Below, in pieces: positions 14,301-64,000 of a stretch of DNA of 64,000 bases (the first letter of the stretch is position 1; every line of letters starts with the position of its first letter). Both the position numbers and the translations under genes were made by a program. The stretch comes from Vitrella brassicaformis CCMP3155. Taxonomy: Eukaryota > Protista > Chromerida. The DNA is taken from assembly GCA_001179505.1 (NCBI GenBank), contig CDMY01000954.1, positions 62,001-126,000 on the forward strand. Reading direction: 5' to 3'. Under the pieces are notes generated by a model. It saw nothing but the letters and a program-made list of their open reading frames with translations. It was not told the origin of the DNA and searched no databases.

Positions 14301-16692
14301 TGTCGATGACCTTCGCGGGGTACTCACTGCCGCCCGCTGTGGTGGCACTCCGGTAATTCTGATGATCATGACACACACATACACATACGCCCATACTCGT
14401 ACAAACCAATGAGCGTCGTGCCCGTTGTCGGCCACCGACCTTCCATTTCCTCATCTTTTTGGTCTGGGCCTCTTTCTGCGCCTCGCGGAGGTGAACCAAC
14501 GACTCTACACACACATACACACACACACAGACGAAAATACACACATTTCAGGTTCCCCCATGTGTTTCTCTGATCGTGTCCTTACCGGCCATCCGCGCCG
14601 AGTAGTCTTGAATTTTGGCGAATCCCTGCTGCAGCAGAACGAGCGAGATGTTGCCGCCCTTGGGGTGCCAGATGGTGCCGTACAAGTTGCCGTACTCGTC
14701 CGCACCCTCCACACGCACATCCACATCGCGGTTCAGCACACGCACCTCCACAAAGTACTTGCACTCAGCTGCACACGCACACACGCATCCATCCATCCAT
14801 CCATCCAGCCATCCAGCCATCCATCCACCGCTGTATGTCCAGTCAGTCGTACCGGCGAATGGTTCGGCCTCGAGTGGCATTTGTTGCGGCGGTCCGCCGC
14901 CGCCATTTTCGACGATGGGTTTGTTGTCGCTGCCGAGGGGGGGCGCCGCGCGCTTCCACCCATCAGCCTGAGCACCAGGGGAAGGGGGGGCAACACACCC
15001 ATGTGTGTGCAGGTCGAGTCGACATTGCCCACCCAAGCCAAGTAGGTAGGTGTGTACCTGTATGCCTGTGAGTATGAGTGGGATGTATATGTTGTCTTGG
15101 GTGAAGATGACGCGGTAGGCCCCGCCGTCGCGCACATACTCGACAATCGCCGGCAGGCGCTCACCCCTGCACACACAGAGTCACACACAACACACACATC
15201 ATGACCCATTCATGTATCTGTCCATGGCTTGGTGTGTGTCTGTCTGTCTGTCATGCGTCTCTTACTTGTGCTTGGCAGCGAACGACTTGACAAAGTCGGC
15301 TGCAAAACACCACACACACACACACACACAGAGTACCTACCCATTGCAATGCATGCGCGTGTCCACTTCTTCCCTCTATGTGTGTGTGCGCGCGCGTGTG
15401 TGTGTTGGCGTACGGTCGTTTTGTGGGAAGGTAACTTGTCGCATTGTGGCATTTGCCGCGGCCGTGTCGTCTGTCCAGAGGCCTCGCTTGGCCGCCTGGG
15501 CCTCCTCCTCGGCAGCCTTCAGCTCTGACCGATCGACACACGCACAACCACACACGCATGTGCTCTCATGTCAACNNNNNNNNNNNNNNNNNNNNNNNNN
15601 NNNNNNNNNNNNNNNNNNNNNNNNNNNNNNNNNNNNNNNNNNNNNNNNNNNNNNNNNNNNNNNNNNNNNNNNNNNNNNNNNNNNNNNNNNNNNNNNNNNN
15701 NNNNNNNNNNNNNNNNNNNNNNNNNNNNNNNNNNNNNNNNNNNNNNNNNNNNNNNNNNNNNNNNNNNNNNNNNNNNNNNNNNNNNNNNNNNNNNNNNNNN
15801 NNNNNNNNNNNNNNNNNNNNNNNNNNNNNNNNNNNNNNNNNNNNNNNNNNNNNNNNNNNNNNNNNNNNNNNNNNNGGGGGGGGGCGGACCGTCGTAGTCA
15901 TGCGCGCCGGGCGATCTGTTGGGCTTCAGCTTGACCAGACCCTGTGTGTGGGGACAGACGCACAGACGCACAGACGCACAGACAGACAGACAGAAAAGGT
16001 TTGTCCATGTGCATGTGGGTGTGTATGCCCCCGGACAGTGTGTGTAGGTTTACTTACCTGTTTGAGCAGGTCTATGCTGATGGAGTTGCCCTCGAATTTG
16101 ATCCAGCCGTACTCGCGGTCATTCTGACTGTACTCAACCTTGAACTCCACCTAAACACACACACACACACACACACGCACACACGCGCGCACGCGCGCAT
16201 GATACCAATGCATGTGCGAGGGGCTCGTCCATCCATCCGGCACTCAGCCTGCTTGCCTGTTTGCCGATGATCTTCTTCCTGATGAACTCGCGAGCATTCC
16301 AACCGAACGGCTGACCACACACACACACACGCACACAGGCGCATGCACCAGCAAGGATAATGTGACGACCTGCACACCGCGTATGTGCGTACCTCGTCTT
16401 GTGTTTCCTTGGTGAGTGACTTCATGGCGATCCGCGGCGCTATGATGGAGGCCAGCGACAGCTGCTTCTCTGGAGGAGGACCACCTGACAGACAGATGCA
16501 AGATAGATCAAAGCAACACAATCACAATCACAACCACAACCACACGCACAGTGATCCGCCCCTCTCGGCTCTGCTTCTGTCCGTGTGTGTGTGTGTGTGA
16601 TGATCTGGTTGCTGCTTGCCTCTGGGTGCTCCGACGAGGACGAATGTGTCGCCCGAGACCACCTGCTTCACCGTAGCGAACCCGCCTGCCAT
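11343..16692 (-). CDS. SND1: Tudor staphylococcal nuclease (Tudor-SN/p100), multi-exon, spans an assembly gap
   Basis: N-terminus MAGGFATVKQVVSGDTFVLVG, then LSLASIIAPR, PFGWNAREFIRKKIIGK, RLYLASIKAPR and EPWSLDAKEFARKKLVNKKVKVVVDY. Tudor domain GKFTDDQQWYRARV...LYIDYGNGE. Last SN segment LNELLVRQGLARL...NVWRYGD. Confidence 0.95.
15576..15875. other. Assembly gap (300 N) inside SND1
   Basis: Exactly 300 N, followed by poly-G. Confidence 1.
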
Positions 16693-19075: not shown

Positions 19076-19375
19076 NNNNNNNNNNNNNNNNNNNNNNNNN
19101 NNNNNNNNNNNNNNNNNNNNNNNNNNNNNNNNNNNNNNNNNNNNNNNNNNNNNNNNNNNNNNNNNNNNNNNNNNNNNNNNNNNNNNNNNNNNNNNNNNNN
19201 NNNNNNNNNNNNNNNNNNNNNNNNNNNNNNNNNNNNNNNNNNNNNNNNNNNNNNNNNNNNNNNNNNNNNNNNNNNNNNNNNNNNNNNNNNNNNNNNNNNN
19301 NNNNNNNNNNNNNNNNNNNNNNNNNNNNNNNNNNNNNNNNNNNNNNNNNNNNNNNNNNNNNNNNNNNNNNNNNNN
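19076..19375. other. Assembly gap (300 N)
   Basis: The same poly-G-TTGACAT sequence lies on both sides. Confidence 1.
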
Positions 19376-27775: not shown

Positions 27776-29545
27776 ATGACTCGCCTCGGCATGATCTCGA
27801 TGGTGATGCTGCTGTTTGCTTGTGCGGCGAGTGCGACCCGCACTCGTTTCCTGCGCGGTGAGACAGACAGACAGACAGACAGAGACGAATAACGCAGAGA
27901 GAGGGAGAGCGGTGGGTCCATGTCTCTCTGTCTGTCTGTTTCTGTGTGTGTGTGTGTGTGGTCAGCGGACGGTTCGTCACTTGGTGCGCTGACTGCGGGT
28001 GCGACGGAGGGTGCGTATTCGGTGGCCGGTGAGGTGATGGATGCCTTGAGCAAGATGCGCCAGGCCAGCTACCACACCCTGATCGGCACGGCCGTCCTCG
28101 TACTCACTGCCATCGCAATGCTCACATCCGGTGAGACACAGACAGACAGACACACACCGAGAGTGAGACACACAATGTCTGTCTGTCTCTGTGCTGTGTT
28201 GTGTTGTGTCGTCAGGAGTTGTGTTCGGCTGGTTGACTTACAGTAAGTCTGCGGCCCGTGTGTGCGGCGTGCTGACGACTTCCATCGTGGCCATCGCTGG
28301 CGCGGCGTACGTGCTCATGTCATTGGGCTACGGCGTGACGGCTGTCGGTGGGCGAGAGCTCTACTACGCCCGATATGCCGACTGGCTCGTCACCACACTG
28401 CTGCTGCTGGTACCACACTCACACTCACAGACACACAGGTGGGTGGACGTCTCTCTGTGTCTGTGTGCAGGTTGACATTCTGCTGTTCGCTGGCGTGTCG
28501 TGGAAGCCCATCGTCGCCCTCTGCACACTCGACGGTCAGTGAGCGATCCACCAAGACACACACACCCATCCCACGTCTCTCTCTGTTTGTGTGCGTGTGT
28601 GTGCAGTGCTGATGATTGGGACGGGGTTTTTGGCTGTGATTGTGTCGACGACCGCGGCCAAGTGGTCTCTGTACCTCTCGGGTGTGGCGTGTCTGCTGCC
28701 CATCGCCATGATACTCTACCAGGAGGCAACCGACACTCAGCTGGTCCTGGTGCCGTCTGCAATCGCCAGCCGGCTGCCGTCTGCAGCGCCCACCAAAGTG
28801 CCCCTCCTCGCTAAGACCGCCACAGCCAAGGAGGGCGCCGACGCGGTCCTCGCGGCCTACCGCAGAGCCACATTGCTCACCCTGTGCGCGTGGGTGTCAT
28901 ATCCTGTGGTATGTACCCAGTCGTGTGCACGCCCACACACACACACAGAGGGGCGGGAGGAGCACTCGTGTATGTGTGTGTGTGTGTGGTTTTTTTTTTG
29001 TGATGGCATGGCAGGTGTGGGTGTTGGGTGAGGGGCTGTTTGTGCTGCCGCTCGACATGGAGATACTCGCATACGCCGCTCTCGACGTACACACACATCG
29101 ACACACACACATCCATCCACCAGCGGTGTCATGTGTGTGTGTGTGTGTGGCAGGTGATGAGCAAGGTCGTGCTGGGCTTCGTGCTGCTCACGGACTTCTC
29201 GCTCTCCGCCAAGGCAACCCACACACACACACACCTCCCTCTCCCTCTCTCTGCCGAATATCATTTGTGTGTGTATGTGCGCAGGACGTGTCGTTGTCTG
29301 CGGCTGCGGACGTGGCCAAGGCGGCGTACAGCTATGCGGCAGAGGCGTTCGGCAAGGCGGGCGACAGCATCAAGAAGGGATCCACCACAGCATTCGAGAC
29401 GCTCAAGAAGCCATTCACCAAGAAGGAGACCCCCAGCACCACCGACAGCGGCGCCCCCACCGCCACCACCCAGCAGCAGACAGCAGCAGCCGCCGCAGCA
29501 CCGCAGCGGACCGGCTTGTTCGGCCTCGGCCGCCGACAGTCGTGA
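27776..29545 (+). CDS. Microbial (type 1) rhodopsin with DTD motif, predicted outward proton pump; N-terminal signal peptide; 8 exons
   Basis: Helix C YARYADWLVTTLLLL|VD gives R82/D85/T89/D96 in bacteriorhodopsin numbering. Helix D LD|VLMIGTGF. Helix F AWVSYPV|VWVLGEG. FG loop PLDMEIL (E194/E204 equivalents). Helix G YAALD|VMSKVVLGF (D212; retinal Lys at 29163-29165). All junctions are phase-consistent. Confidence 0.93.
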
Positions 29546-31695: not shown

Positions 31696-32744
31696 GCTGA
31701 GACTAGGCAAAGGGAGAGAAGCGGAGAGAAGACCAGAAAAGTGAAGAAAAGGAAAGGAATGCGTACAGGGCGCTAACGGTCGCGATCGACGTCGACTTTG
31801 GTCGATCGAACTCATTGTTGTACGCAAAACTCCTGGACATTTCAACTCATTTCATCACGTGTCATTGGTTATGTGTCCGTTCCATGCGCTCATGCACTCA
31901 CGCATCCACTCTCTTTGTCATTCGTCTGTCTATTTGTCGCTCAGTCACTTGTCGTTTCTGTGTGTTTGTTGCCAGTGGTGTGATTGTTGGTTTGCTCACG
32001 ACTGTCGGCGGCCGAGGCCGAACAGCCCGGTCCGCTGCGGTGCTGCGGCGGCTGCTGCTGTCTGCTGCTGGGTGGTGGCGGTGGGGGCGCCGCTGTCGGT
32101 GGTGCTGGGGGTCTCCTTCTTGGTGAATGGCTTCTTGAGCGTCTCGAATGCCGTGGTGGATCCCTTCTTGATGCTGTCGCCCGCCTTGCCGAACGCCTCA
32201 GCCGCATAGCTGTACGCCGCCTTGGCCACGTCGGCAGCCGCAGACAACGACACGTCCTGCGCACACACATACACACACAAATGATATTCGGCAGAGAGAG
32301 GGAGAGCGAGGTGTGTGTGTGTGTGTGTGTGGGTTGCCTTGGCGGAGAGCGAGAAGTTTGTGAGCAGCACGAAGCCCAGCACGACCTTGCTCATCACCTG
32401 CCACACACACACACACACATGACACCGCTGGTGGATGGATGTGTGTGTGTCGATGTGTGTGTACGTCGAGAGCGGCGTATGCGAGTATCTCCATGTCGAG
32501 CGGCAGCACAAACAGCCCCTCACCCAACACCCACACCTGACATGCCATCACACCAACACACACACATACATATACACGAGTGCTCCTCCCGCCCCTCTGT
32601 GTGTGTGTGTGGGCGTGCACACGACTGGGTACATACCACAGGATATGACACCCACGCGCACAGGGTGAGCAATGTGGCTCTGCGGTAGGCCGCGAGGACC
32701 GCGTCGGCGCCCTCCTTGGCTGTGGCGGTCTTAGCGAGGAGGGG

Positions 32745-33044
32745 NNNNNNNNNNNNNNNNNNNNNNNNNNNNNNNNNNNNNNNNNNNNNNNNNNNNNNNN
32801 NNNNNNNNNNNNNNNNNNNNNNNNNNNNNNNNNNNNNNNNNNNNNNNNNNNNNNNNNNNNNNNNNNNNNNNNNNNNNNNNNNNNNNNNNNNNNNNNNNNN
32901 NNNNNNNNNNNNNNNNNNNNNNNNNNNNNNNNNNNNNNNNNNNNNNNNNNNNNNNNNNNNNNNNNNNNNNNNNNNNNNNNNNNNNNNNNNNNNNNNNNNN
33001 NNNNNNNNNNNNNNNNNNNNNNNNNNNNNNNNNNNNNNNNNNNN
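32745..33044. other. Assembly gap (300 N) in rhodopsin copy 2
   Basis: Corresponds to only about 107 bp (28694-28800) in copy 1. Confidence 1.
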
Positions 33045-34247
33045 GACACGCCACACCCGAGAGGTACAGAGACCACTTGGCCGCGGTCGTCGACACAATC
33101 ACAGCCAAAAACCCCGTCCCAATCATCAGCACTGCACACACACGCACACAAACAGAGAGAGACGTGGGATGGGTGTGTGTGTCTTGGTGGATCGCTCACT
33201 GACCGTCGAGTGTGCAGAGGGCGACGATGGGCTTCCACGACACGCCAGCGAACAGCAGAATGTCAACCTGCACACAGACACAGAGAGACGTCCACCCACC
33301 TGTGTGTCTGTGAGTGTGAGTGTGGTACCAGCAGCAGCAGTGTGGTGACGAGCCAGTCGGCATATCGGCCGTAGTAGAGCTCGCGCCCGCCGACAGCCGT
33401 CACGCCGTAGCCCAACGACATGAGCACGTACGCCGCGCCAGCGATGGCCACGATGGAAGTCGTCAGCACGCCGCACACACGTGGCGGCCCGCTTGCAGAA
33501 GGCGCTCTTCGGCAGCTTGAAGGCACCCGTTGAGCGTGTGGGCGCCCAGCGATCACCCGTGCCGTTGTCATGGCGATGGGCAGCAGACACGCCACACCCG
33601 AGAGGTACAGAGACCACTTGGCCGCGGTCGTCGACACAATCACAGCCAAAAACCCCGTCCCAATCATCAGCACTGCACACACACGCACACAAACAGAGAG
33701 AGACGTGGGATGGGTGTGTGTGTCTTGGTGGATCGCTCACTGACCGTCGAGTGTGCAGAGGGCGACGATGGGCTTCCACGACACGCCAGCGAACAGCAGA
33801 ATGTCAACCTGCACACAGACACAGAGAGACGTCCACCCACCTGTGTGTCTGTGAGTGTGAGTGTGGTACCAGCAGCAGCAGTGTGGTGACGAGCCAGTCG
33901 GCATATCGGCCGTAGTAGAGCTCGCGCCCGCCGACAGCCGTCACGCCGTAGCCCAACGACATGAGCACGTACGCCGCGCCAGCGATGGCCACGATGGAAG
34001 TCGTCAGCACGCCGCACACACGGGCCGCAGACTTACTGTAAGTCAACCAGCCGAACACAACTCCTGACGACACAACACAACACAGCACAGAGACAGACAG
34101 ACATTGTGTGTCTCACTCTCGGTGTGTCTGTCTGTCTGTGTCTCACCGGATGTGAGCATTGCGATGGCGGTGAGTACGAGGACGGCCGTGCCGATCAGGG
34201 TGTGGTAGCTGGCCTGGCGCATCTTGCTCAAGGCATCCATCACCTCA

Positions 34248-34547
34248 NNNNNNNNNNNNNNNNNNNNNNNNNNNNNNNNNNNNNNNNNNNNNNNNNNNNN
34301 NNNNNNNNNNNNNNNNNNNNNNNNNNNNNNNNNNNNNNNNNNNNNNNNNNNNNNNNNNNNNNNNNNNNNNNNNNNNNNNNNNNNNNNNNNNNNNNNNNNN
34401 NNNNNNNNNNNNNNNNNNNNNNNNNNNNNNNNNNNNNNNNNNNNNNNNNNNNNNNNNNNNNNNNNNNNNNNNNNNNNNNNNNNNNNNNNNNNNNNNNNNN
34501 NNNNNNNNNNNNNNNNNNNNNNNNNNNNNNNNNNNNNNNNNNNNNNN
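34248..34547. other. Assembly gap (300 N) between repeated rhodopsin blocks
   Basis: Exactly 300 N. Confidence 1.
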
Positions 34548-35349
34548 TCATGGCGATGGGCAGCAGACACGCCACACCCGAGAGGTACAGAGACCACTTG
34601 GCCGCGGTCGTCGACACAATCACAGCCAAAAACCCCGTCCCAATCATCAGCACTGCACACACACGCACACAAACAGAGAGAGACGTGGGATGGGTGTGTG
34701 TGTCTTGGTGGATCGCTCACTGACCGTCGAGTGTGCAGAGGGCGACGATGGGCTTCCACGACACGCCAGCGAACAGCAGAATGTCAACCTGCACACAGAC
34801 ACAGAGAGACGTCCACCCACCTGTGTGTCTGTGAGTGTGAGTGTGGTACCAGCAGCAGCAGTGTGGTGACGAGCCAGTCGGCATATCGGCCGTAGTAGAG
34901 CTCGCGCCCGCCGACAGCCGTCACGCCGTAGCCCAACGACATGAGCACGTACGCCGCGCCAGCGATGGCCACGATGGAAGTCGTCAGCACGCCGCACACA
35001 CGGGCCGCAGACTTACTGTAAGTCAACCAGCCGAACACAACTCCTGACGACACAACACAACACAGCACAGAGACAGACAGACATTGTGTGTCTCACTCTC
35101 GGTGTGTCTGTCTGTCTGTGTCTCACCGGATGTGAGCATTGCGATGGCGGTGAGTACGAGGACGGCCGTGCCGATCAGGGTGTGGTAGCTGGCCTGGCGC
35201 ATCTTGCTCAAGGCATCCATCACCTCACCGGCCACCGAATACGCACTCACCGGCCACCGAATACGCACTCTCCGTCGCACCCGCAGTCAGCGCCGAAAAT
35301 GGAAACCCCTCCGGCTCCGCACGAAGGAAGCGGACAGTACGTGGAGCTC

Positions 35350-36809
35350 TCATGCGGCTGGGTCTCCATATCTCTCCAATCTCGCGTCCACCACCGAACA
35401 CAGATCAGTCAGTCGGCCCCCAGTCGGCCCGCCGTCCATCAGACGTCCGTCGAAGACCCACTCTATCGACAAGTCACCGCGGCCGGCGATATCCCCATCG
35501 AAGCCCTCGCCCGCCGGCCCCAGACAAACCGACTCCACGCCGTCACTTGCCGAGGTCGTGTCTTGGTAGAGCCTCACCTCCACCATCGAGCCGAACTGAG
35601 GGAGCCGAATGGCTGGGCTGTCAATCAGGAGGGCGCTCTGCAGGGCCAGGAGGGTTGAGTCGTGGCCAACCAACAAACCGAACCTGACAAAACGATCCAG
35701 AGAGCACTGGAGGTGCCCACACACACGTGCCCTCCTGGATGCGATGCTGTATACCTGGTCGCCTCTGCTGAGCTGTGGACGTGTGTGAAGGTGTCGCACA
35801 CGTATTTCATCAGCGAGCCGGCGGCGAACCAAGAGAGCTTCTCCCCCTCATACAGACGCGACAGGTAGGCCCTCGCCCCCTCCCGCACACCCGCCAGCTC
35901 TTCCTCAGACATAGCCACCGGCAGCTTGATGGAATGGTACTCGTAGGCGCCAATCACAGAACGAAGCTTCCGCACCACAGAGAGGTCCCCCTCATGCTCG
36001 TCCAGGGCCAGCACACGATTGGCCAGGCGGATCTCGCGGTCGAATTGCCGTGCGAGGTGTTGCCATTCGGGGCTGCGCTTCTTGTCTTTGAGCAGTTGCT
36101 TGGCCCGCCTCGACTTGTACCCCCGCAGCAGGGGGTCATGCCCAGTGCCGTTGTATGTGTGGACACAGCGGCGGACGTGCCGACACAGATCACCCATCTC
36201 CTCTCCCCCTCCCAAGGCGCACTCGTCATGGCCGAACCAGCCCGCCGCAATGGCAACTGCAGTCTCGTTGGCCCGGTCACTCTCACTGCTGCGGACATAC
36301 AGCCTCGCCGACTCATCCGTTTGATCCCAATCAGCAGCATCTCGGCTCACGCCAAGCGACTCGGCATAGGTGACGCCAAGCAGTCTTCCCAGCATGGTCG
36401 CGTCATGAACACCGGCAGCTGTCAGAGATAAGGGAGGCCGTGAGAAGGGCCACGCTGCGGAGTCGTTTCCTGTCGATGTGATGAAGGCCGTGCTTGGTGC
36501 CCTTGCCGTGTGCCGCAGCAGGACGATGGATGCCTTTAGCTGCCGCGAGATTCCGCCACGAACGAGCCCCATAAACAAGGCAAACACAGTCGAGAGCAGT
36601 AACATCAAGGCGCCACAACCTGCAGATCTCTCTGCACGACGCCAGGAAGCGAGATGATAAGACGTGCGCGCTCGGATCCGCTTGACACCCGCACCCACAC
36701 CATCATCATCTCCGTCATCACCACCACCTCGTTCGTCATCAGCGATGTTCCCTCGCGGTGATGGGCCGCTTTGGTGCGAGGCGGGAGTGACGACGTGCAG
36801 GTCCCTCAA
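35350..36809 (-). CDS. Histidine acid phosphatase (His_Phos_2 branch), type II membrane-anchored; 5' exon unresolved
   Basis: TM ALMLLLSTVFALFMGLV followed by VLLRHTARAP (RHGxRxP variant), LYVRSSESDRANETA and C-terminal LLVGHDSTLLALQSAL...PQFGSMVEVRLY. Confidence 0.85.
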
Positions 36810-43238: not shown

Positions 43239-45038
43239 TCAGTCGATGTCCAGTGACACAAACAGGCCGGTCGTCTTGTCGATTCGCCCCAGCTGCTGCC
43301 ACGAGAATCGGCAGTCCTGATCGCCCAGATGCTCGTTGAAGCCCTTGACCACACCCACCAGACCCGGCTCGTCCAGCCGGGCCCTGTGCACCACCTCACG
43401 CACACCCACACGGCCCCGTGTGTGGACCACCTGGTGTGGGCGGCTGTCGGCCCTGATGGCGAAGCACTGCAGCGGCACACGCACCATCACGCCGCCCACA
43501 CTAGCCATGCCGCCCACCACCTCCCTGTTGGTGCTCGTCTGTGTGGCCGCCGACTTGACGAAGTGGGCGACGGCCGCACTCACACGGCGCCTCAGCTGCG
43601 ACTCGCCGGTGAGGTACTCGTCGATAGCCGCTGCAGCAGCGGGGGGCTCGTGCAGGAAGGCGCCGATCTTCCATGCGATGGCCTCTGCCTCGTGTGGGCC
43701 GAATGCCATGTTGGATGGGGAGGGGTGGGGGTGGGCGCCGTCGTGGTGGGGGGCGAGGGGCAGCAGACGGGTAAGGAGCATCGAGTGGTCACGCTGGGGG
43801 GCGAGGGCGGCGTTGATGGCTGACATGACGGCCTCGGACAGCTCAGCCAGCACTGTGGTGTACTCGAACAACATCAGTCGGCGAGAACGGCGCTGCCTCT
43901 CGGTGGCGGTGGGCATGCGGGCGATGGATGGGGCCGCCCCGCCCCGCAGCAGCACACCGATGGTGGTCTTCAACCTGCGGATCTCTCTTCTGGTCTCCGA
44001 CGCATAAAGCCCCGAGCCTGCATAGTGGCGCGGCTGCAGCTCCTGCTGTTCGATGGCATCATCACACTGATTGGCAGCGACGGCGAGTGGTGTATCGGGC
44101 TGGTTGGGCTTCCCTCTGTTGACGTCGTCAGCTGTGAGCTGGCGGCACAGCCAACGAGCCACACGGTAGGAGCCATGCCGTGCCGCCTCGTGCAGTGGCG
44201 TGCAGCCCATGGTGTCTGTTGCCTTCATGTCGGCTCCGTGGCTGGTGATGAAGGTGAGGTACGCGTCGATGAAGGACTGGGAGAACAGGCAGGGAAGGTG
44301 CCTGGCTGCCAAATGCACCAGACCGCGTCCACCAGCCCGCCCAATCGAATGCTTCTCGGCTAATGCAGACCGCTCCGCTGCGAGTGTGCTGTCGTGTTGG
44401 ATTAGCCGACGGTAGATTGACATGAGAATGTCCTCACACTCACGAGTGGGGGGAGGGGCAGCACCGTCGATGTAGGGAAGCTGCATCACCAGTGGCACCA
44501 ATCTCCGCACGTCGACCTGACGCGCCAGGAGGGCCTCGACTGCCGTCAGGCTGCGCGCACGAATCGCCACATGGAGGGGCCTGTCCTCGTTGATGTCCGC
44601 CCCGCCGTCGATGAGTGCGTTGATGACGTCACGCTGCAGCTGACGGGAGGACCACTGCGGTAGGACGACGCATATCTTGCACAGCGCGACATATTTTTAC
44701 ACATATCTTCGAGCTGCAGCAGAGAGGAATGGGTAGTTTGTTGGGCTGTCGATGGCGAAAGACAGGCATCTCTGTCGACAGCCCGATGGGACCTCTCCTT
44801 CGGGAAACCGCTGGTGGCAGAGGCCGCCGGTGGCTCTCGGGTCGGCTCCTTGGCGGATCAGCTGTGTGACTTGGGCGGCTTCCGTGAACGTGCGCCGAAT
44901 GCAGCCCTCCAACAGCCGTCGACTGACAGGACTGACACCCTCAACAGGGACAATCTTGACGTCATCCAGCCCCTTGCAGCCGGGCGGGACCTCGGAAGGA
45001 TTTGCTGACGATGCGGCAGAGGACGAGTGGGCCATCAA
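43239..45038 (-). CDS. Ankyrin-repeat protein of an expanded lineage-specific family, interrupted by an in-frame TAA (44697-44699)
   Basis: LIDGGADINEDRPLHVAI, HGADMKATDTMGCTPLHEAARHG and DVNRGKPNQPDTPLAVAA. ORF 44697-45038 is in the same frame as the downstream part. It is either a pseudogene or carries a 27-nt intron. Confidence 0.8.
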
Positions 45039-49848: not shown

Positions 49849-50368
49849 GGGGGGGGGGGGCTGGCGCGCTGACNNNNNNNNNNNNNNNNNNNNNNNNNNN
49901 NNNNNNNNNNNNNNNNNNNNNNNNNNNNNNNNNNNNNNNNNNNNNNNNNNNNNNNNNNNNNNNNNNNNNNNNNNNNNNNNNNNNNNNNNNNNNNNNNNNN
50001 NNNNNNNNNNNNNNNNNNNNNNNNNNNNNNNNNNNNNNNNNNNNNNNNNNNNNNNNNNNNNNNNNNNNNNNNNNNNNNNNNNNNNNNNNNNNNNNNNNNN
50101 NNNNNNNNNNNNNNNNNNNNNNNNNNNNNNNNNNNNNNNNNNNNNNNNNNNNNNNNNNNNNNNNNNNNNNNNNGGGGGGGGGGGGGGCTGGCGCGCTGAC
50201 TGCATGTGTCACGGGGGGGGACGGGGCTGGCGCGCTGACTGCATGTGTCACGGGGGGGGACGGGGCTGGCGCGCTGACTGCATGTGTCACGGGGGGGGAC
50301 GGGGCTGGCGCGCTGACTGCATGTGTCACGGGGGGGGACGGGGCTGGCGCGCTGACTGCATGTGTCAC
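49849..50368. repeat. 39-bp G-rich minisatellite spanning a gap
   Basis: Unit CGGGGGGGGACGGGGCTGGCGCGCTGACTGCATGTGTCA, about five copies at 50174-50368 plus a partial copy at 49849-49873. It explains the 13-aa periodic ORFs. Confidence 0.95.
49874..50173. other. Assembly gap (300 N) in minisatellite
   Basis: Exactly 300 N. Confidence 1.
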
Positions 50369-51031: not shown

Positions 51032-51699
51032 TCATTCATCCAGGACGTCAGCCTCCCCCAGTACGTCCCGCTTGGGGGAAGCCTTCGGCTCCGCCATGAC
51101 GGCAGACACGATAAGCGGACCGACGTTGTCGCCAGTGGCCTCGTTGTGCTTGGCGTGGGTGCCATCACACACAGGGAATGTACCAGACAGCCAGCACCTA
51201 GTGGCACCCACACAGTCAGAATGAATGAATGAGTAAGGCCTTCCTTCCCCAGAGTGTGTGCCTGTCATTGATTGTCACTCACCTGCAGTAGACCTTCTTC
51301 TTGCCCGTTGGGATCTTCTCCTGATGCACCACCTGCATTGCAATCAACGCCACACACAGCATAGCACAGCACAGCACACCGATGGCAGAATGAGGGAGCA
51401 TTGCTGCCCCATCTCTGATGAATGACTCGCTCACCTTGGGGCTCTCCGGGTCGACTGAGAGATTGATTTTGCCTGGTCCTTCGACAGACATCTGCAGAGC
51501 ACTGGCGCATCTGCAAAAGACCACACACAGCTCTCATGATTGGATCTGCGCAGGTGTGCCGCCGCATTCACGATACTGCCCACCTGTTTCTCGCCCTCAG
51601 TGATGAGGGCATCTGCCCTAGAAAGCCGGGCGACGGCGCGAAGGCGCGTGTGAGGCCGAGGACACAAGATGCGAGAGCGAGTGCGCACAGCAGCTTCAT
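51032..51699 (-). CDS. CDGSH iron-sulfur (NEET) protein with bipartite plastid-targeting presequence; 4 exons
   Basis: Spliced product [39 protein letters not shown]|[25 protein letters not shown]|[17 protein letters not shown]|[30 protein letters not shown]. It has the 3Cys-1His C-x-C-x2-S-x3-P-x-C-D-G-(S/T)-H motif. No single ORF in the supplied track shows it. Confidence 0.92.
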
Positions 51700-51949
51700 G
51701 GGCAGATCTGCCTCCAAATTCAGAGCCTCAAGAGCCTACAAAGTTGCGTTTTTCCTTACAGTCGTTTGGAGAGCTCGCAAAAGCAGTCTTAGCTCGCGAA
51801 AAGGGGATGGGAGGAGCGAGGATGACAAGAGAAGGGTGCCGACAGACGGCAGAGTCCGAGTAGGCAAGCTCGGCAACGGTGATCTCCAGTCGAGTCGCAG
51901 GGATCCACAGCAGTCACTTACTAAACTGGAGTCGAGTCGAGTCAGCATC
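51700..51949. promoter_or_regulatory. Putative bidirectional promoter (NEET / acetolactate synthase)
   Basis: Divergent ATGs lie 250 bp apart. Confidence 0.45.
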
Positions 51950-54900
51950 ATGGATGGGTGCCCAGCCGTCCGCCTGGACGCCCTCATCTCCCTCTCCCTC
52001 ATACTCAGCTGCCTACACTCTCTCTTGGGCACCCTGTGCGAGGCGGCCGTCCCGCCACGCAACAGGCCACCTACAGCAGCCGATGCGGCCGCACCCCTCC
52101 CTCACACACGCAGGAAGACCACCTTCCTGACACCGCCAATCGCTAGAGGTGCGGCCAACCGGCGTCTCACCCGTCTTGGCATGACCCCTCCACCTCGGCC
52201 AGATGCGACACAGACGGCCCCGCCACGCGAGATGGCCGAGTCGATTGCCGATGCCAAGTCATTGCTCGGCCCGTTCGGCTACCCCAATGGGTCTGATGAG
52301 GGCCACACGGCAGCCAGCAGGGGCACCCGCATCAACGGCCACGAGGACAAACATGCCAAGCGGAAGGAGGCCCTGGGTGCGGCAGCTGCTGCAGGAGGCC
52401 ACAGCCTGGCGGCTTTGCAGCGGCTGGCCCGTCTGAGTGGCGAGCTCAAGGAGACGGAGGCTCTGGATAGTCTTCGCACGCTCGCCAACACGTTGACTGA
52501 GATGAAAGATCTGCTGCGGTCGCCATCTCTGCGGCAGATACTGAGCAACGACCGGGCGGCAAAGGCGCTGAGGGAGTTTCTGAGTGCCTTCGAGGGGCCC
52601 GTGACGGGTTCTTTGTACGATTTGATCGACAAATTCGAAGACGATGTTGTGCAGGAGTGTTACCGTGAATTAAGGGAGGTCCTACGAGCGCCCGAGACGG
52701 TGATCCCTTCCCCGGAGGAGAGGGAGGGGTATGTGCAGCTGAGTGGGGGTGAGATAGTGACGGCCATGCTCAAGCGGCACGGCGTGGAGGCTGTGTTTGG
52801 GTACTCTGGGGGGGCTGTGCTGCCGCTGCTGGATTCTTTCTATGGCAACGACATCAAGTGGTACATGTCCACCCACGAGCAGTGTGCGGGCCACGCTGCC
52901 ATGGGGGTTGCCAAATCAACCGGTGCGCGACAAGCAGATCTGGGAGTGGAGTGGAGTCTTAAGGGGCACGTGCTCGTGTGTGTGTGTTCGTGTGTGCGCG
53001 TGTGATGTGCAGGCAAGGTCGGTGTGGCTGTGGTGACGTCTGGGCCAGGTCTGACCAACCTCATCACCCCCCTGCAGGACGCAATCGGCGATGGAGTCCC
53101 ACTCGTCGGTAAGACCACACCACGATGTCACCACGACCACTGCCTTCATGTGTTGGTTGTGTGTGTGCCTGCCTGCCTGCCTGCCTGTGTGTATGCGTCA
53201 GTGTTCTCTGGCCAGGTGCCGACTGGTGCGATAGGCAGCGACGCCTTCCAGGAGTGCCCTGCCTGTGCGCTGACCAAACCCTGCACCAAATGGAACTTCA
53301 GAGCTGAGAAGGTCGAGGACCTGCCATGGGTGAGTGCAGAATGCTTCCTCCTGCACCACACAAGCACCCCTGCACTGTCCTGTCTGTGTATTGTCCAATC
53401 AGGCGGTGGAGCAGGCCTTCCGCATCGCCACCAGCGGCCGCCCCGGCCCGGTGCATATCGACCTGCCCAAGGACATCTCGTCCGGAAAGGTATGGCTGCC
53501 CAAGTCGTTCCTCGAGGGCGAGCTGCCCGAGGAGATCAAGATGGAGACCTTCCAGTGGAGGAAGCCGCTGGTGGACGTGCAGCAGATACAGCAGCTGGCG
53601 CACCTCATTAACCAGGCCAAGAGGCCCGTCTTGTATGTGGGTCAGGGGGCCGTCGGTGCGGCCGACCAAGTGAGGGAGCTCGCTGCCAAGGCGTCGATAC
53701 CGGTGAGATGCGACGGAGGGGGGAGAGAGACCGACAGCACATGACGGAATGTGTGTGAGGCTTGTGGTGGGTGCAGGTGGCGACGACGATCCACGGAATG
53801 GGTGTGTTTGACGAGGAGGACCCTTTGAGCCTCCACATGCTGGGGATGCACGGGTCGGCCTACGGCAACCTGGCCATACAAAAGGCAGACCTCGTCATCG
53901 CTATGGGCAGCAGATTCGACGACAGAACCACCGGCATACTCAACAAATACGCACCAGAGGTACGTCACACACACACACAGAGAGAGAGCCCATGTGCATG
54001 GTGACATGTGTGTGTGTTGTGTGTTGGTCAGGCGAAGGCTGCGGCAGAGAGGGGGGAGGGCGGGATAGTTCATGTGGATATCGAGAAGAAGCAGTTCGGC
54101 AAGAGCGGCGTGGCACCGCACATGGCCGTCCATGGCGACTGCAAAGACGTCATTGAGGTACGTGTGTGCGATGACGAAGCGAGGCCCAACACATCGCAAC
54201 AAGACACCTGCCTGTGTTGCCTGTGTGTGTATGTGTGTGTGTGTCATTTCAGGCACTGTTGCCCTTGGTTGAGCGTCATGACCGCGACGAGTGGCTGCAG
54301 CAGTGCCGGCAGTGGAAGGCCGACATACCGTTCAGGTGGATACCCCCAGAGGGCAACCAAATCAAGGTCCAGCAGGTCATCGACGCCATCCACAGGTGAT
54401 TAACAATGAAGAACGGAGGACGGAACGAAACATCCAAACACCCACCCATGTGTGTGTCCTGTGCTCATCGGCGGCTCGTCAGGAAATCGACGGAGCTGCT
54501 GCCGCCCGACGTGCGTGAGAAGATGATCTTCACGACAGGTGTGGGCAACCACCAGATGATGACGGCGCAGTTCATCCGGTGGCGGCGGCCGCGGTCGATG
54601 CTGACGTCGGGCAGCTTAGGGGTCATGGGGGTGGGGCTGCCCTACGCCATCGGGGCCCAGGTGGCCAACCCCGACAGCATGGTGGTGCTCATCGATGGGG
54701 ACGGGTCGTTCAACATGAGCTTGATGGACTTGAAGACGGTGGCCAACTACAAGCTGCCCATCAAGATTGCCATCATGAACGACGACAGGCAGCAGGTCGG
54801 CTTGAGGATGGATGAGCCGCGGAGGGGCAGATGTGGATAAATGTGTGGATCTCTCTGTGTATGGGTGCGTGTGTCAGATGGTGTGGATATGGCAAAAGCT

Positions 54901-55399: not shown

Positions 55400-56472
55400 G
55401 CTGGCGAAAGGAGCAGGCAACAAGAGCTGGTTTTTTCCTGCCGTCGTGACGACCAACGCCCAACGTTGCTTTTGATCTTCTGACTTACTTCCTTCTGGTT
55501 TGTGTATGTGGTGGCTCCCTCTCTCCCTCCCTCTGCACGTTGATTGGTGGATGGGCTGATGGATTGATGGAAGTGTCTCATAATATGCGAGACACGTGCC
55601 TAGTTGTGTGCTGGGGTGGGGTGTGCTCCCTTGCATCGATGACTTAGATACATAGAGGGTGTGGGTGGGTGACATGGATGATTTTGTAGAGGGAGGGACA
55701 GACAGGAGCAGGAGGGGAAGGGAACGGATCAGTCAGCGGGCCTGTGTTGTGTTGTGTATGTCCTGTCGGGGGGCTGCGTAAGTGGGCCGTTTTGGAGTGT
55801 CGGTTGACGCATGCATACTGAGTTGTCGAGGACAGACGGAATGTCGGAGTGTCGGTCGCGGAAAGTGTCGGCTATTTGTCAGCTATCTACCGAGTCACCG
55901 GCAGACATACACACACTGACTGAGTGGAGGACTCTTTAAGCCCTTAACCCAATGATTCCCTGTCTGTCTGTTTTTCGACACACACCAAACACAACGGTGT
56001 GTGTGTGTGTGTGAGTGTGTCTGGTCGACCACACATACGGACCATTGACGACTGAGTGCGTATACATGGGGGATGGTGGCTAGCACAGCCCTAGCCTCCC
56101 CCCTGCCTCTCTCTCTTCCCAGCTAGCTGTACAGCGGTGCCCTCGGTGTCTGTCTCTCCCCCCCNNNNNNNNNNNNNNNNNNNNNNNNNNNNNNNNNNNN
56201 NNNNNNNNNNNNNNNNNNNNNNNNNNNNNNNNNNNNNNNNNNNNNNNNNNNNNNNNNNNNNNNNNNNNNNNNNNNNNNNNNNNNNNNNNNNNNNNNNNNN
56301 NNNNNNNNNNNNNNNNNNNNNNNNNNNNNNNNNNNNNNNNNNNNNNNNNNNNNNNNNNNNNNNNNNNNNNNNNNNNNNNNNNNNNNNNNNNNNNNNNNNN
56401 NNNNNNNNNNNNNNNNNNNNNNNNNNNNNNNNNNNNNNNNNNNNNNNNNNNNNNNNNNNNNNNNCCCCCCCC

Positions 56473-59611: not shown

Positions 59612-59862
59612 AAGTACTGACTGTTGCCTGCTTGACTAACAAAACTGGTTCACCGACCGACCGACCGATGCCGCTCCCTGTCGGACGCCGCGTCACAACT
59701 GCATCGGTCCTCCCTGCAAAGTGCGAGCTTCCAAGGAAGCTCGCAAGTCGCGCTAGGACACTGCGTGAAACTGCTCGCTCCATCAGCTGCCCCGAGAGGG
59801 TGAAAGATCTGGGGTCCCATTCGTTGCTGCATCTTTCCTGTCTGTTGTCTTGTCAGTTCTAC

Positions 59863-61308
59863 ATGGTGACGGTGAAGACACAATCATGCAAGGTGCTGCA
59901 GCTGGTGACCCTCACCGCTCCGCTGGGCACTCTGGCTGCTGCTGCACATGCAGTCAACACTCAAGCACACCTGCAGAGGCCTCCCACTGCAAATCGACGG
60001 GCCTTCCTGGACACCGCCGCACCACCCAGATCTGGCAGCCGGCATCCATCTCGCCTGCGGCCATGGCGCGTTCAAACGAGGCTCTACTCTCTGCCGGCGC
60101 TTTCCGATGAGTCGACCAATGCAACCACGGTCTCGTCAGCCGATTATGAGGAATATTCCGGACGGCGCAAGGCCGCTCTCGACGTTGCCCTTCGGTCCTT
60201 CGACCTCTCCCCGCCTCAGCTCGCCAATGAATCGACCATGCATACGACGAGAGATGCAGCAGCATCAGCAGCATCAGCAGCAGCAACGGCACCGGCTGTT
60301 GACCGGTGCATCGACTGGGATGGCTTCGGGATGTCCGCTCAGCGGACCTACTACACCTACGTTCGGCCACACCCCTCCAAGCTGGCTGGTCTGCAGAGGG
60401 AGCCGCTGGAGAGGTCGGCGTGGCGGACCGCTGCGCAGATCGCCGGGCTGGTGCGGGCCTACCAGAACTCACTGAATGCCTTCTTTCGCAACCAGGACTC
60501 GACCCGCCCGAAGCTGCGCGAGGCCGGCGGCCGAAACCCCCTGGTGGTGGTGCTTGACAATGTCAGGTCCGCACACAATGTTGGCAGCATCATCAGGTGG
60601 GTGAGAAGATCCATTCATCCGCAGCCACGGTCCCATATGTGTGTGGTCAGGACGGCCGAAGCGGGAGGTGTGGAGCGAGTGGTGGTGTGCGGTATCACGC
60701 CGCACCCGCCGCACCCCAAGTTGGACAAGACGTCGCTTGGGGCGCACGAGCACATTCCTGTGCACCACGTGGGGACCTGTGTGGAGGCGGTCCGACAGCT
60801 CAAGGAGGAAGGGTGAGCCGAGTAACAAGTGTGGGCAGGGCAGATTGTGTGCTGTGTGTGGTATGTGTAGTTTCACAATAGTGGTGCTCGAGACGACTGA
60901 CAGGAGCCAACCGCATGTCGATGTAAGCGACCATGAGCACGCCAGGACCATGCCTGTCTGTCTCTGTGTGTGTGTGTGTGTGGTATCTTGGCGTCCGTCA
61001 GATATCCTTTCCTCCGAAGACGGCTGTCGTGTTCGGCAATGAAGTGTCGGGCGTGGCCACTGATGTGCTCCACCTGGCAGGTATGGGTGTGCGAAAGGCC
61101 GCATCAACGCACCAGACCACACCAGACCACACCAGACCAGACCCCCAAATGTGTGTCCTTCGTTCATGCAGACGTCTTGTGTGAGATTCCGATGTTTGGA
61201 GTGAAGAACTCTATCAATGTTGCTAACGCGGCCAGTATTGTGGTGTTCGAGGTACTCAGGCAGTGGAGGGCCTTCGACCGGCTCAAGCAGACAGTGAACG
61301 AAGAGTAG
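59863..61308 (+). CDS. trmH: SpoU/TrmH-family RNA 2'-O-methyltransferase, probably organelle-targeted; start uncertain
   Basis: VVLDNVRSAHNVGSIIR|TAEA, KTSLGAH, VVFGNEVSGV, EIPMFGVKNSINVANAASIVVFE. The N-terminal hydrophobic stretch is followed by an R/S-rich region. Confidence 0.9.

Positions 61309-61699: not shown

Positions 61700-64000
<2,301 letters not shown>

What the first reader, a model, noticed from the sequence alone, without database searches (positions are those of the whole stretch)
27776..29545. Signal-peptide-bearing DTD proton-pump rhodopsin in a photosynthetic alveolate
Seen: a complete bacteriorhodopsin-like pump set (R82, D85, T89, D96, D115, W182, Y185, P186, E194, E204, D212, K216). 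It follows a cleavable-looking signal peptide (MTRLGMISMVMLLFACAASA), an RFLR motif and a roughly 30-aa spacer. Established: the DTD motif marks outward H+ pumps of the archaeal/fungal/algal type, whereas diatom and dinoflagellate pumps are mostly DTE proteorhodopsin/xanthorhodopsin types. Inference: light-driven acidification or energisation of a secretory-pathway compartment (plastid envelope, vacuole) or the plasma membrane, as a retinal-based supplement to photosynthesis.
Basis: partly seen in the sequence, partly recalled or inferred. Interest (0 to 1): 0.75.

Follow-up and report, generated by a model that had tools for sequence, protein, structure and literature searches.

The report
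Uncharacterised bacteriorhodopsin-like pump gene in Vitrella
The window holds a real, intact, eight-exon gene of the coral-associated alga Vitrella brassicaformis. It encodes a bacteriorhodopsin-type, probably light-driven proton pump that is already in the public annotation as an uncharacterised protein, so it is a divergent new member of a known kind rather than a new kind of system.

Summary
Window 27776-29545 (+) is an eight-exon gene encoding a 399-aa microbial rhodopsin.

The window is contig CDMY01000954.1 of Vitrella brassicaformis CCMP3155. The gene is deposited there as CEM37782.1 / A0A0G4H2B3, "uncharacterised protein", 389 aa, starting at Met11 of my model.

The nearest solved structures are haloarchaeal proton pumps (AR3, BR, deltarhodopsin). 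In trees it falls on the eukaryote side of a 99/95 split, as a long, deep branch, at most 36-40% identical to anything found.

An outward H+ pump is the best reading (about 0.7). It is not proven, because pump-like channelrhodopsins also keep the DTD motif.

The signal peptide exists only if the first ATG (27776) is used; the deposited model starts 30 nt later. Localisation and physiology are untested.

BR-type rhodopsins with predicted signal peptides in Vitrella and Chromera were already catalogued in 2023.

Unusual points:
- Pro91 is replaced by Leu and Pro50 by Val.
- There is a roughly 29-aa cytoplasmic E-F loop insertion.
- A diverged, 5'-truncated inverted second copy lies 2.3 kb downstream, broken by scaffold gaps. 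Between the copies dN/dS is 0.07.

Novelty: new member of a known kind. Interest about 0.3.

The parts
27776..27857 (+). Exon 1: first ATG (27776), signal-peptide-like segment (aa 1-20), then TRTRFLR. The deposited CDS starts at the fourth in-frame ATG, 27806 (Met11).
   Evidence: In-frame stop upstream at 27644-46 and no ATG between 27604 and 27775.
27966..28130 (+). Exon 2: luminal/extracellular N-terminal extension (AF2 helix of moderate confidence) and most of helix A.
   Evidence: Pfam gives no rhodopsin hit on this exon alone.
28216..28409 (+). Exon 3: end of helix A, helix B (T46, Y57 equivalents), B-C hairpin, first half of helix C with R135/D138/T142 (BR R82/D85/T89). Pro91 is replaced by Leu144.
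   Evidence: Pfam 42.6 bits. PDB hits include BR at 1e-8. Big search.
28471..28534 (+). Exon 4: D149 (BR D96, proton donor) to D168 (BR D115).
   Evidence: Collinear alignment to AR3; model.
28607..28908 (+). Exon 5: helices D and E, the E-F loop, helix F up to W264/Y267/P268 (BR W182/Y185/P186).
28717..28803 (+). Lineage-specific insertion of about 29 aa in the cytoplasmic E-F loop (model aa 206-234). Predicted flexible.
   Evidence: Absent from all 11 other sequences in alignment A1. pLDDT 55-60. Unaligned gap between the two HMMER domains against AR3.
29015..29086 (+). Exon 6: end of helix F (W271 = BR W189), F-G loop, E275/E285 (BR E194/E204), D293 (BR D212).
   Evidence: alignment, domain 2.
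29154..29213 (+). Exon 7: helix G with the Schiff-base lysine K297 (BR K216).
   Evidence: alignment; invariant Lys in alignment A1.
29214..29284 (+). Last intron, with a non-canonical GC donor (GC...AG).
   Evidence: The deposited 389-aa product needs this splice. All 5 differences from the second copy in exon 8 are synonymous in the spliced frame.
29285..29545 (+). Exon 8: 86-aa Ala/Thr/Lys/Gln-rich cytoplasmic tail and the TGA stop. No domain match; predicted mostly disordered.
31937..35252 (-). Inverted (tail-to-tail), 5'-truncated second copy of the gene. It is split by two 300-N scaffold gaps (32745-33044, 34248-34547) and contains repeated partial pieces. It is deposited as CEM37787.1 (119 aa) and CEM37785.1 (436 aa, chimeric).

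Best explanation
The gene encodes a type-1 (microbial) rhodopsin of the bacteriorhodopsin-like DTD class.

Proposed mechanism:
- All-trans retinal is bound as a protonated Schiff base to K297.
- After photo-isomerisation the proton goes to D138 (BR D85). It is released to the extracellular/luminal side through R135 and the E275/E285 pair.
- The Schiff base is reprotonated from D149 (BR D96) on the cytoplasmic side.
- The net result is outward (cytoplasm to outside or lumen) H+ pumping.

If translation starts at the first ATG, a cleavable ER signal peptide places the roughly 40-residue N-terminal extension in the lumen. This fits the N-out topology of all such rhodopsins and the positive-inside distribution of the loops. 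The protein then travels the secretory pathway to an unknown membrane.

Shown: gene structure, family, residues, predicted fold, nearest relatives, selective constraint.
Inferred: retinal binding, pumping, signal-peptide use, destination, physiological role.
For: - Pfam PF01036 at 1.9e-31.
- The best solved relatives by sequence are all outward H+ pumps: archaerhodopsin-3 at 1.9e-25, then AR1, deltarhodopsin, AR2 and BR.
- The AF2 model has a 7-TM core with pLDDT above 90.
- Foldseek top hits are BR, AR3 and deltarhodopsin (target TM-score 0.79-0.88). The fungal pump LR, the algal pump CsR and cyanorhodopsin follow. No channelrhodopsin appears in the top 50.
- All carboxylates and aromatic pocket residues of the BR proton path are present. 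T46 and Y57 are also kept.
- Positions that differ from BR (W138 to Y, S141 to G, A215 to S) vary in the same way in the eukaryotic relatives.
- Between this gene and its inverted paralogue there are 10 synonymous and 2 non-synonymous differences. That gives dN/dS 0.07, p = 6.6e-5, so the sequence is maintained as a protein.
- Hydropathy shows an N-terminal hydrophobic segment plus 7 TM helices.
Against: - No experiment and no transcript evidence was available here.
- The DTD motif is shared with pump-like cation channelrhodopsins. I could not place reference BCCR/KCR sequences in the tree.
- Pro91, present in more than 90% of 71 aligned relatives, is Leu here, and Pro50 is Val.
- The protein sits on a long branch, and its exact sister changes between the two trees.
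- A roughly 29-aa E-F loop insertion and an 86-aa tail are the kind of additions seen in signalling rhodopsins.
- The deposited start codon would remove the signal peptide.
Confidence: 0.7

Rival explanations
1. It is a light-gated channel or a sensory photoreceptor that has kept the pump-type DTD residues, as the cryptophyte BCCRs, ChRmine and the kalium channelrhodopsins have. The E-F loop insertion and the C-terminal tail would serve gating or signalling.
For: DTD and the BR-like fold are shared by BCCRs, in which the two Asp residues form pore constrictions. Vitrella is known to carry channelrhodopsins of its own type. Other points in favour are the long branch, the Pro91-to-Leu change and the lineage-specific loop and tail.
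Against: The closest sequences and structures are pumps, and no channelrhodopsin is among the 50 best Foldseek matches. The full proton-release pair E194/E204, R82, T46 and D115 are all retained. The Vitrella channelrhodopsins described in PMC10147648 are different proteins (accessions CEL94649 and CEM28120).
Confidence: 0.17
2. There is no signal peptide. Translation starts at Met11 as in the deposited annotation, or the hydrophobic N-terminus is not cleaved. The protein would then be inserted through helix A like most microbial rhodopsins, and the N-terminal extension would be just an extracellular tail. This rival concerns targeting only, not pumping.
For: The deposited CDS begins at window 27806. 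The second copy of the gene lacks exon 1 altogether and starts at the Met just before helix A. One of the closest named relatives, Chromera Cvel_15171 (P0079), has no N-terminal extension.
Against: 27776 is the first ATG after an in-frame stop, has a purine at -3, and has no other ATG in the 170 nt before it. The resulting 20 residues have the classical n-h-c layout with small residues at -3 and -1. Signal peptides have been predicted on other chromerid BR-type rhodopsins.
Confidence: 0.3
3. The gene is a decaying duplicate, or an artefact of a badly assembled repeat region, and makes no working protein.
For: It lies next to a messy inverted duplicate with scaffold gaps and 100% identical pieces flanking the gaps. 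The collection holds no member from a transcriptome in its 90% cluster. A nearly invariant proline is lost.
Against: The reading frame is open through eight exons, with no N in 27776-29545. All functional residues are kept. dN/dS is 0.07 against the paralogue. The 3' arm of the inverted copy lies on the same uninterrupted stretch as this gene, so the duplication is not a scaffolding artefact.
Confidence: 0.05

Closest known systems
Haloarchaeal proton pumps: archaerhodopsin-3/-1/-2, deltarhodopsin, bacteriorhodopsin (PDB 7zy3, 1uaz, 4fbz, 1vgo, 1c3w)
   Same: - Best sequence matches among solved structures (83-93 bits) and best fold matches.
- DTD motif, R82, D115, E194/E204, D212 and K216 are all kept.
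- W86, W182, Y185, P186 and W189 are all kept.
- Same 7-TM order, with no indels in helices B-D and F-G.
   Different: - Only about 30-36% identical.
- On the other side of a 99/95-supported split from all sampled prokaryotic sequences.
- Spliced eukaryotic gene.
- Pro50 and Pro91 are replaced.
- Extra N-terminal segment, E-F insertion and 86-aa tail.
Eukaryotic BR-like DTD rhodopsins: Chromera velia Cvel_15171 and Cvel_13428; relatives in Pelagophyceae CCMP2097, Tetraselmis and Corallochytrium; characterised pumps CsR (6gyh), Acetabularia ARII and Leptosphaeria LR (7bmh)
   Same: - Same side of the main split in both trees.
- Chromera Cvel_15171 is the best full-length sequence match (132 bits).
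- Same DTD motif, and the same drift at W138, S141 and A215.
- LR and CsR are among the fold matches.
   Different: - Identity is only 31-36%.
- The sister relation to Chromera appears in the quick tree (SH-aLRT 86) but not in the careful tree, where the Vitrella protein branches at the base.
- None of the aligned relatives has the E-F insertion or Leu at the Pro91 position.
VitbrasRh1 and ChrveliRh1, BR-type chromerid rhodopsins with predicted signal peptides (PMC10865886, 2023)
   Same: Same organisms, same class ('BR'), and the same idea of a cleavable N-terminal signal peptide on a pump-type rhodopsin.
   Different: Their published signal peptides (MRSSVVVCVLLALVAVTRA and MKSAQSFVIALCVLAALVSA) differ from the one here, so this is another paralogue. 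Their full sequences and the paper's supplement were not available to me.
Bacteriorhodopsin-like cation channelrhodopsins (GtCCRs, ChRmine, HcKCR1)
   Same: Eukaryotic, BR-like fold, DTD motif retained.
   Different: They are channels, with the two Asp residues used as pore constrictions. None appeared among the 50 best fold matches. Phylogenetic relation was not tested, for lack of reference sequences.
Plastid-localised xanthorhodopsin FcR1 of the diatom Fragilariopsis (PMC10627834)
   Same: A precedent for a rhodopsin pump that reaches a plastid-associated membrane by the secretory route in an alga with a complex plastid (abstract).
   Different: It belongs to a different rhodopsin family (xanthorhodopsin/proteorhodopsin type, not BR-like DTD). 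Localisation of the Vitrella protein is unknown.

Membership tests
Microbial (type-1) rhodopsin, Pfam PF01036 | Profile match above the curated threshold | tested here: met
   109.7 bits against a cut-off of 24.6 for P0081. Exon 3 alone scores 42.6 bits.
Microbial (type-1) rhodopsin, Pfam PF01036 | Seven transmembrane helices with the Schiff-base lysine in helix 7 | tested here: met
   Seven hydrophobic segments after the N-terminal one. The AF2 7-TM core has pLDDT above 90. K297 aligns with BR K216.
BR-like outward proton pump (DTD type) | Helix-C motif D85/T89/D96 | tested here: met
   D138, T142 and D149 from the alignments to BR and AR3.
BR-like outward proton pump (DTD type) | Counter-ion complex and proton-release group: R82, D212, E194, E204 | tested here: met
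   R135, D293, E275 and E285. There is one residue fewer than BR between W189 and E194.
BR-like outward proton pump (DTD type) | Retinal pocket: W86, W182, Y185, P186, W189 | tested here: met
   All are present. W138 to Y, S141 to G, T142 to V and M145 to L differ from BR, but W138 and S141 vary similarly in the eukaryotic relatives.
BR-like outward proton pump (DTD type) | Conserved helix-C proline (P91, TTPLLL) | tested here: not met
   Leu144 here. Pro is present in more than 90% of the 71 aligned sequences. By my own knowledge this residue is not catalytic. BR P91A and P50A mutant structures exist in the PDB.
BR-like outward proton pump (DTD type) | Retinal binding and light-driven outward H+ transport | not testable with these tools
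   Needs expression and a pH-electrode or patch-clamp assay.
Eukaryotic branch of the BR-like rhodopsins | Groups with eukaryotic rather than prokaryotic sequences | tested here: met
   The split has SH-aLRT 97 in the quick tree and 99/95 in the careful tree. Named members on its side are Chromera (two), Pelagophyceae, Tetraselmis and Corallochytrium. Its position inside that side is unresolved, and the trees are unrooted.
Bacteriorhodopsin-like cation channelrhodopsins (BCCR/KCR) | Phylogenetic grouping with cryptophyte or hyphochytrid BCCRs | not tested
   No tool gave me reference BCCR sequences. The only indirect evidence is that none is among the 50 best Foldseek matches.
Secretory protein with a cleavable ER signal peptide | n-region charge, h-region of at least 7-15 hydrophobic residues, small residues at -3 and -1 | tested here: inconclusive
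   By eye the features are met for the 399-aa model: Arg3, a 15-residue hydrophobic core, A-S-A. No predictor was available. With the deposited start (Met11) the segment is too short.
Bipartite plastid-targeting presequence of complex algae (ASAFind type) | Phe (or another aromatic residue or Leu) at +1 of the signal-peptide cleavage site, followed by a transit-peptide-like stretch | tested here: not met
   +1 is Thr and Phe is at +5. The following 40 residues hold four acidic residues. Caveat: the +1 Phe is weakly conserved in Vitrella (PMC6668581), and ASAFind itself was not run.

The most novel reading that the evidence does not exclude
Vitrella keeps two nearly identical pump genes in inverted orientation that differ mainly at the 5' end. 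One has a signal-peptide exon plus a luminal extension. The other starts just before helix A. On this reading the same light-driven pump is sent to two different membranes, for example a secretory, vacuolar or periplastid membrane and another membrane. The lineage-specific E-F loop insertion and the loss of Pro91 would alter gating or regulation in a way not seen in other BR-like pumps.
Probability: 0.1. Interest if true: 0.6.

Novelty: new member of a known kind. Interest (0 to 1): 0.3.

Why it matters
[quoted passage not shown] A retinal-based proton pump routed through their secretory pathway would be a second light-energy system beside the plastid, and a possible source of organelle-targeted optogenetic tools.

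This gene is a divergent, untested representative of that class. Its odd features are Leu at Pro91, Val at Pro50, a long cytoplasmic loop, and a paralogue without a signal peptide. These make it a reasonable but not urgent candidate for expression and localisation studies. The class itself, and signal-peptide-bearing members in chromerids, have already been described.

Tried and rejected
Searches that gave nothing:
- The word search with exon 5 found nothing. This was expected, because its length filter excludes full-length relatives.
- PDB sequence searches with exons 5, 6 and 7 alone gave nothing; the pieces are too short or too divergent.
- NCBIfam has no model that matches this protein or four of the five relatives scanned with it.
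- A literature search for the accessions CEM37782, A0A0G4H2B3, CEM37785 and A0A0G4H294 found no paper.
- The supplement of the 2023 survey is not held. I therefore could not check whether this paralogue is one of its numbered Vitrella rhodopsins.

Readings considered and rejected:
- Recent transfer from haloarchaea. The best prokaryotic matches among GTDB species genomes are only 28-38% identical and lie across a strongly supported split.
- Read-through of the last intron instead of a GC-AG splice. It gives an Arg/Pro-rich low-complexity tail. The deposited product and the purely synonymous differences in exon 8 support the splice.
- A hidden intron inside the E-F insertion. By eye, the only in-segment GT...AG pair I noted is about 37-45 nt, shorter than the gene's seven introns (61-108 nt), and the segment lacks their CA-rich/TG-rich signature. 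I did not enumerate all pairs. Only transcripts can exclude this.
- The RFLR motif as a PEXEL or TEXEL export signal. By my own knowledge of those consensus motifs (RxLxE/Q/D and RRLxx), RFLRA fits neither.

Step left out:
- The joined 399-aa model was never sent to any search or folding tool. Exons were searched separately by reference.
- Full-length work used the database's own record P0081 (389 aa), which lacks the first ten residues.
- The first ten residues were therefore examined only by eye and in local scripts.

Full report
**What is there**

Window 27776-29545 on the + strand reads as an eight-exon gene. The exons are 27776-27857, 27966-28130, 28216-28409, 28471-28534, 28607-28908, 29015-29086, 29154-29213 and 29285-29545. 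Six introns are GT-AG and the last (29214-29284) is GC-AG. All are 61-108 nt. The first base pairs after the donors are CA-rich in several introns and TG-rich runs precede the acceptor CAG. The spliced product is 399 aa.

Exon 3 alone passes Pfam's Bac_rhodopsin threshold (42.6 bits). It matches bacteriorhodopsin, archaerhodopsins and a bacterial rhodopsin in the PDB. Exon 5 gives a weak Pfam hit. The short exons give nothing on their own.

**Whose gene it is**

The word search with exon 5 was blank, so I used the single exhaustive search with exon 3. It found one near-identical protein, P0001. This is CEM37787.1 of Vitrella brassicaformis CCMP3155, assembly GCA_001179505.1, contig CDMY01000954.1.

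The fetched locus is 100% identical to window 40220-29717 in reverse, so the window is that contig. The "photosynthetic alveolate" part of the finding is therefore right.

A wider locus shows that the gene under study is annotated at window 27806-29545 with a 389-aa product carrying PF01036. That product, P0081, is CEM37782.1 / UniProt A0A0G4H2B3, "uncharacterized protein". It is exactly my model without its first ten residues.

The annotators therefore used the same seven introns, GC-AG included, but a later start codon. From here on I used P0081 as the reference for full-length work. The joined 399-aa model itself was not submitted to any search or fold and is left out.

**Check of the residues**

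P0081 scores 1.9e-31 against Bac_rhodopsin. Its best solved relatives are archaerhodopsin-3 (1.9e-25), AR1, deltarhodopsin, AR2 and bacteriorhodopsin. The alignments run straight across every exon junction, which independently supports the splice model.

With BR chain numbering the model carries:
- R135 (R82), D138 (D85), T142 (T89), D149 (D96), D168 (D115)
- W264 (W182), Y267 (Y185), P268 (P186), W271 (W189)
- E275 (E194), E285 (E204), D293 (D212), K297 (K216)
- also T103 (T46) and Y114 (Y57)

Differences from BR:
- P50 to V and P91 to L
- W138 to Y, S141 to G, T142 to V, M145 to L, A215 to S

The pocket changes at W138, S141 and A215 are shared with eukaryotic relatives. Leu at the Pro91 position is rare, since Pro is present in more than 90% of 71 aligned sequences.

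A segment of about 29 residues (window 28717-28803) is inserted in the cytoplasmic E-F loop. It is absent from all aligned relatives.

**Fold**

AlphaFold2 with a 71-sequence alignment gives mean pLDDT 77. The seven-helix core is above 90, the E-F insertion is at 55-60, and the last roughly 50 residues are below 50.

Foldseek against the PDB returns BR, AR3 and deltarhodopsin first, with target TM-score 0.79-0.88. The fungal pump LR, the algal pump CsR and cyanorhodopsin follow. No channelrhodopsin is in the top 50.

**Relatives and phylogeny**

Nothing close exists in the collections searched. Apart from its own paralogue, the best exon-3 hit in 1.84 billion representatives is 47 bits. Word searches with the full domain found only proteins of 31-40% identity. 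The best of 378 matches in 185,579 prokaryotic species genomes are 28-38% identical, mostly Halobacteriales.

The best full-length match is Chromera velia Cvel_15171 at 132 bits.

A 95-row quick tree puts the Vitrella protein in a 47-row set (SH-aLRT 97). It appears there as sister to that Chromera protein (SH-aLRT 86), but both are on long branches.

That set holds all sequences I could name as eukaryotic:
- Chromera (two)
- Pelagophyceae CCMP2097
- Tetraselmis
- Corallochytrium

A 62-row careful tree without the longest branches keeps the eukaryote/prokaryote split (99/95). There the Vitrella protein sits unresolved at the base of the eukaryotic side.

In short, it is a deep, fast-evolving member of the eukaryotic BR-like group. 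It is not a recent archaeal import, and its exact sister is uncertain.

**The N-terminus**

With the ATG at 27776 the protein starts M-T-R. A 15-residue hydrophobic core and A-S-A follow, which is the classical signal-peptide layout. Then comes TRTRFLR and about 35 more residues, including a moderately confident amphipathic helix, before helix A.

That ATG is the first after an in-frame stop (27644-46). It has G at -3 and A at +4, and no other ATG occurs in the preceding 170 nt. By the scanning rule it would be used if the transcript reaches it.

The deposited CDS instead starts at Met11. I had no transcript data and no signal-peptide predictor, so this remains open.

A cleaved signal peptide would fit the N-out topology, and the Lys/Arg-rich A-B, C-D and E-F loops fit the positive-inside rule.

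Plastid targeting is not supported by the simple +1 Phe criterion, because +1 is Thr. That Phe is weak in Vitrella anyway (PMC6668581). RFLRA fits neither the PEXEL nor the TEXEL consensus (my own knowledge).

**Function**

The most likely function is a light-driven outward proton pump working as in BR. I rate it about 0.7, not higher, for three reasons:
- Pump-like channelrhodopsins keep DTD (10.1101/2021.08.15.456392).
- I could not include their sequences in a tree.
- This protein has unusual features: Leu91, a long loop and a tail.

Location and physiological role are not addressed by any result here. The plastid-localised diatom xanthorhodopsin (PMC10627834) is a precedent, not evidence.

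**The second copy**

On the minus strand at 31937-35252 lies an inverted, tail-to-tail copy. It is 94-99% identical and begins inside exon 2, so it lacks the signal-peptide exon.

It is cut by two 300-N scaffold gaps. Pieces next to the gaps repeat each other at 100%, which suggests overlapping contigs joined with false gaps. One partial tandem repeat lies inside an uninterrupted piece. The deposited models there (119 aa and a 436-aa chimera) reflect this disorder.

All pieces break at gene coordinates of about 28711 and 28801, which is exactly the E-F insertion. Whether copy 2 has the insertion is therefore unknown.

The 3' arm is on the same gap-free stretch as the gene under study, so the duplication is real.

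In the comparable coding sequence the copies differ at 10 synonymous and 2 non-synonymous sites (A134G and D307N). This gives dN/dS 0.07, p = 6.6e-5. It argues that the sequence is kept as a working protein. Because all five exon-8 differences are synonymous, it also supports the reading frame after the GC-AG intron.

**Novelty**

- The gene is in public databases but unnamed, and I found no paper citing it.
- A 2023 survey already classed chromerid rhodopsins as BR-type. It predicted signal peptides on one Vitrella and one Chromera protein, both with different signal sequences from this one (PMC10865886).
- DTD pumps in algae and fungi are well known.

This is a new, divergent member of a known kind. 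Interest is about 0.3.

Noticed in passing
window 31937-35252 (-), N runs 32745-33044 and 34248-34547: Inverted, 5'-truncated second copy of the rhodopsin gene. Pieces beside the scaffold gaps are 100% identical to each other (33568-34247 and 34548-35227), which points to contig overlaps scaffolded as gaps. A further partial tandem piece (33045-33486) follows an 81-nt junction. The deposited proteins CEM37787.1 (119 aa, runs into intron 4) and CEM37785.1 (436 aa, duplicated helices) look like annotation artefacts of this region.
   Followed up: partly
window 28711-28801 compared with copy-2 breakpoints at 34548, 33568, 33045 and 32744: Every piece of the second copy ends or begins at the borders of the E-F loop insertion of the first copy. 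The stretch contains a short direct repeat (GCCGTCTGCA twice). Either the copies differ here or the assembler broke here.
   Followed up: no
window 15576-15875, 19076-19375, 49874-50173, 56165-56464: Four more scaffold gaps of exactly 300 N elsewhere in the window.
   Followed up: no
window 27858-29284, the seven introns: All the introns are short (61-108 nt). Several are CA/GACA-rich just after the donor, and TG-rich runs precede the CAG acceptor. One uses a GC donor. The same dinucleotide runs produce the many THTHT/CVCVC pseudo-ORFs in the mechanical ORF list.
   Followed up: partly
P0079 (Chromera velia Cvel_15171, A0A0G4F4D6): The 286-aa genome-derived model repeats its helix F-G segment at the C-terminus. 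The MMETSP transcript-derived member of the same cluster (P0003, 224 aa) does not. This is probably a gene-model error in the Chromera annotation.
   Followed up: no
P0082, P0083 (Halobaculum limi, named 'bacteriorhodopsin'), P0084: These archaeal proteins share the rare TTLLL (no Pro91) with the Vitrella protein. They have Gly-Tyr where the D96 donor would be, and they fall in a separate clade. They were picked up only through shared 5-residue words, and they look like sensory-type rhodopsins rather than pumps.
   Followed up: no
window 35350-36395 (-), 43242-44570 (-), 51536-53002 (+), 59632-60813 (+), 62373-63392 (-); L002 19976-21507: The neighbouring genes are ordinary nuclear genes: a histidine phosphatase (branch 2), ankyrin-repeat protein, MOSC-domain protein, TPP-dependent enzyme, SpoU methylase and MCM helicase. 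No carotenoid-cleavage or retinal-synthesis gene matched in the ten ORFs scanned against Pfam or among the Pfam tags of the called genes in the 22-kb locus L002.
   Followed up: partly
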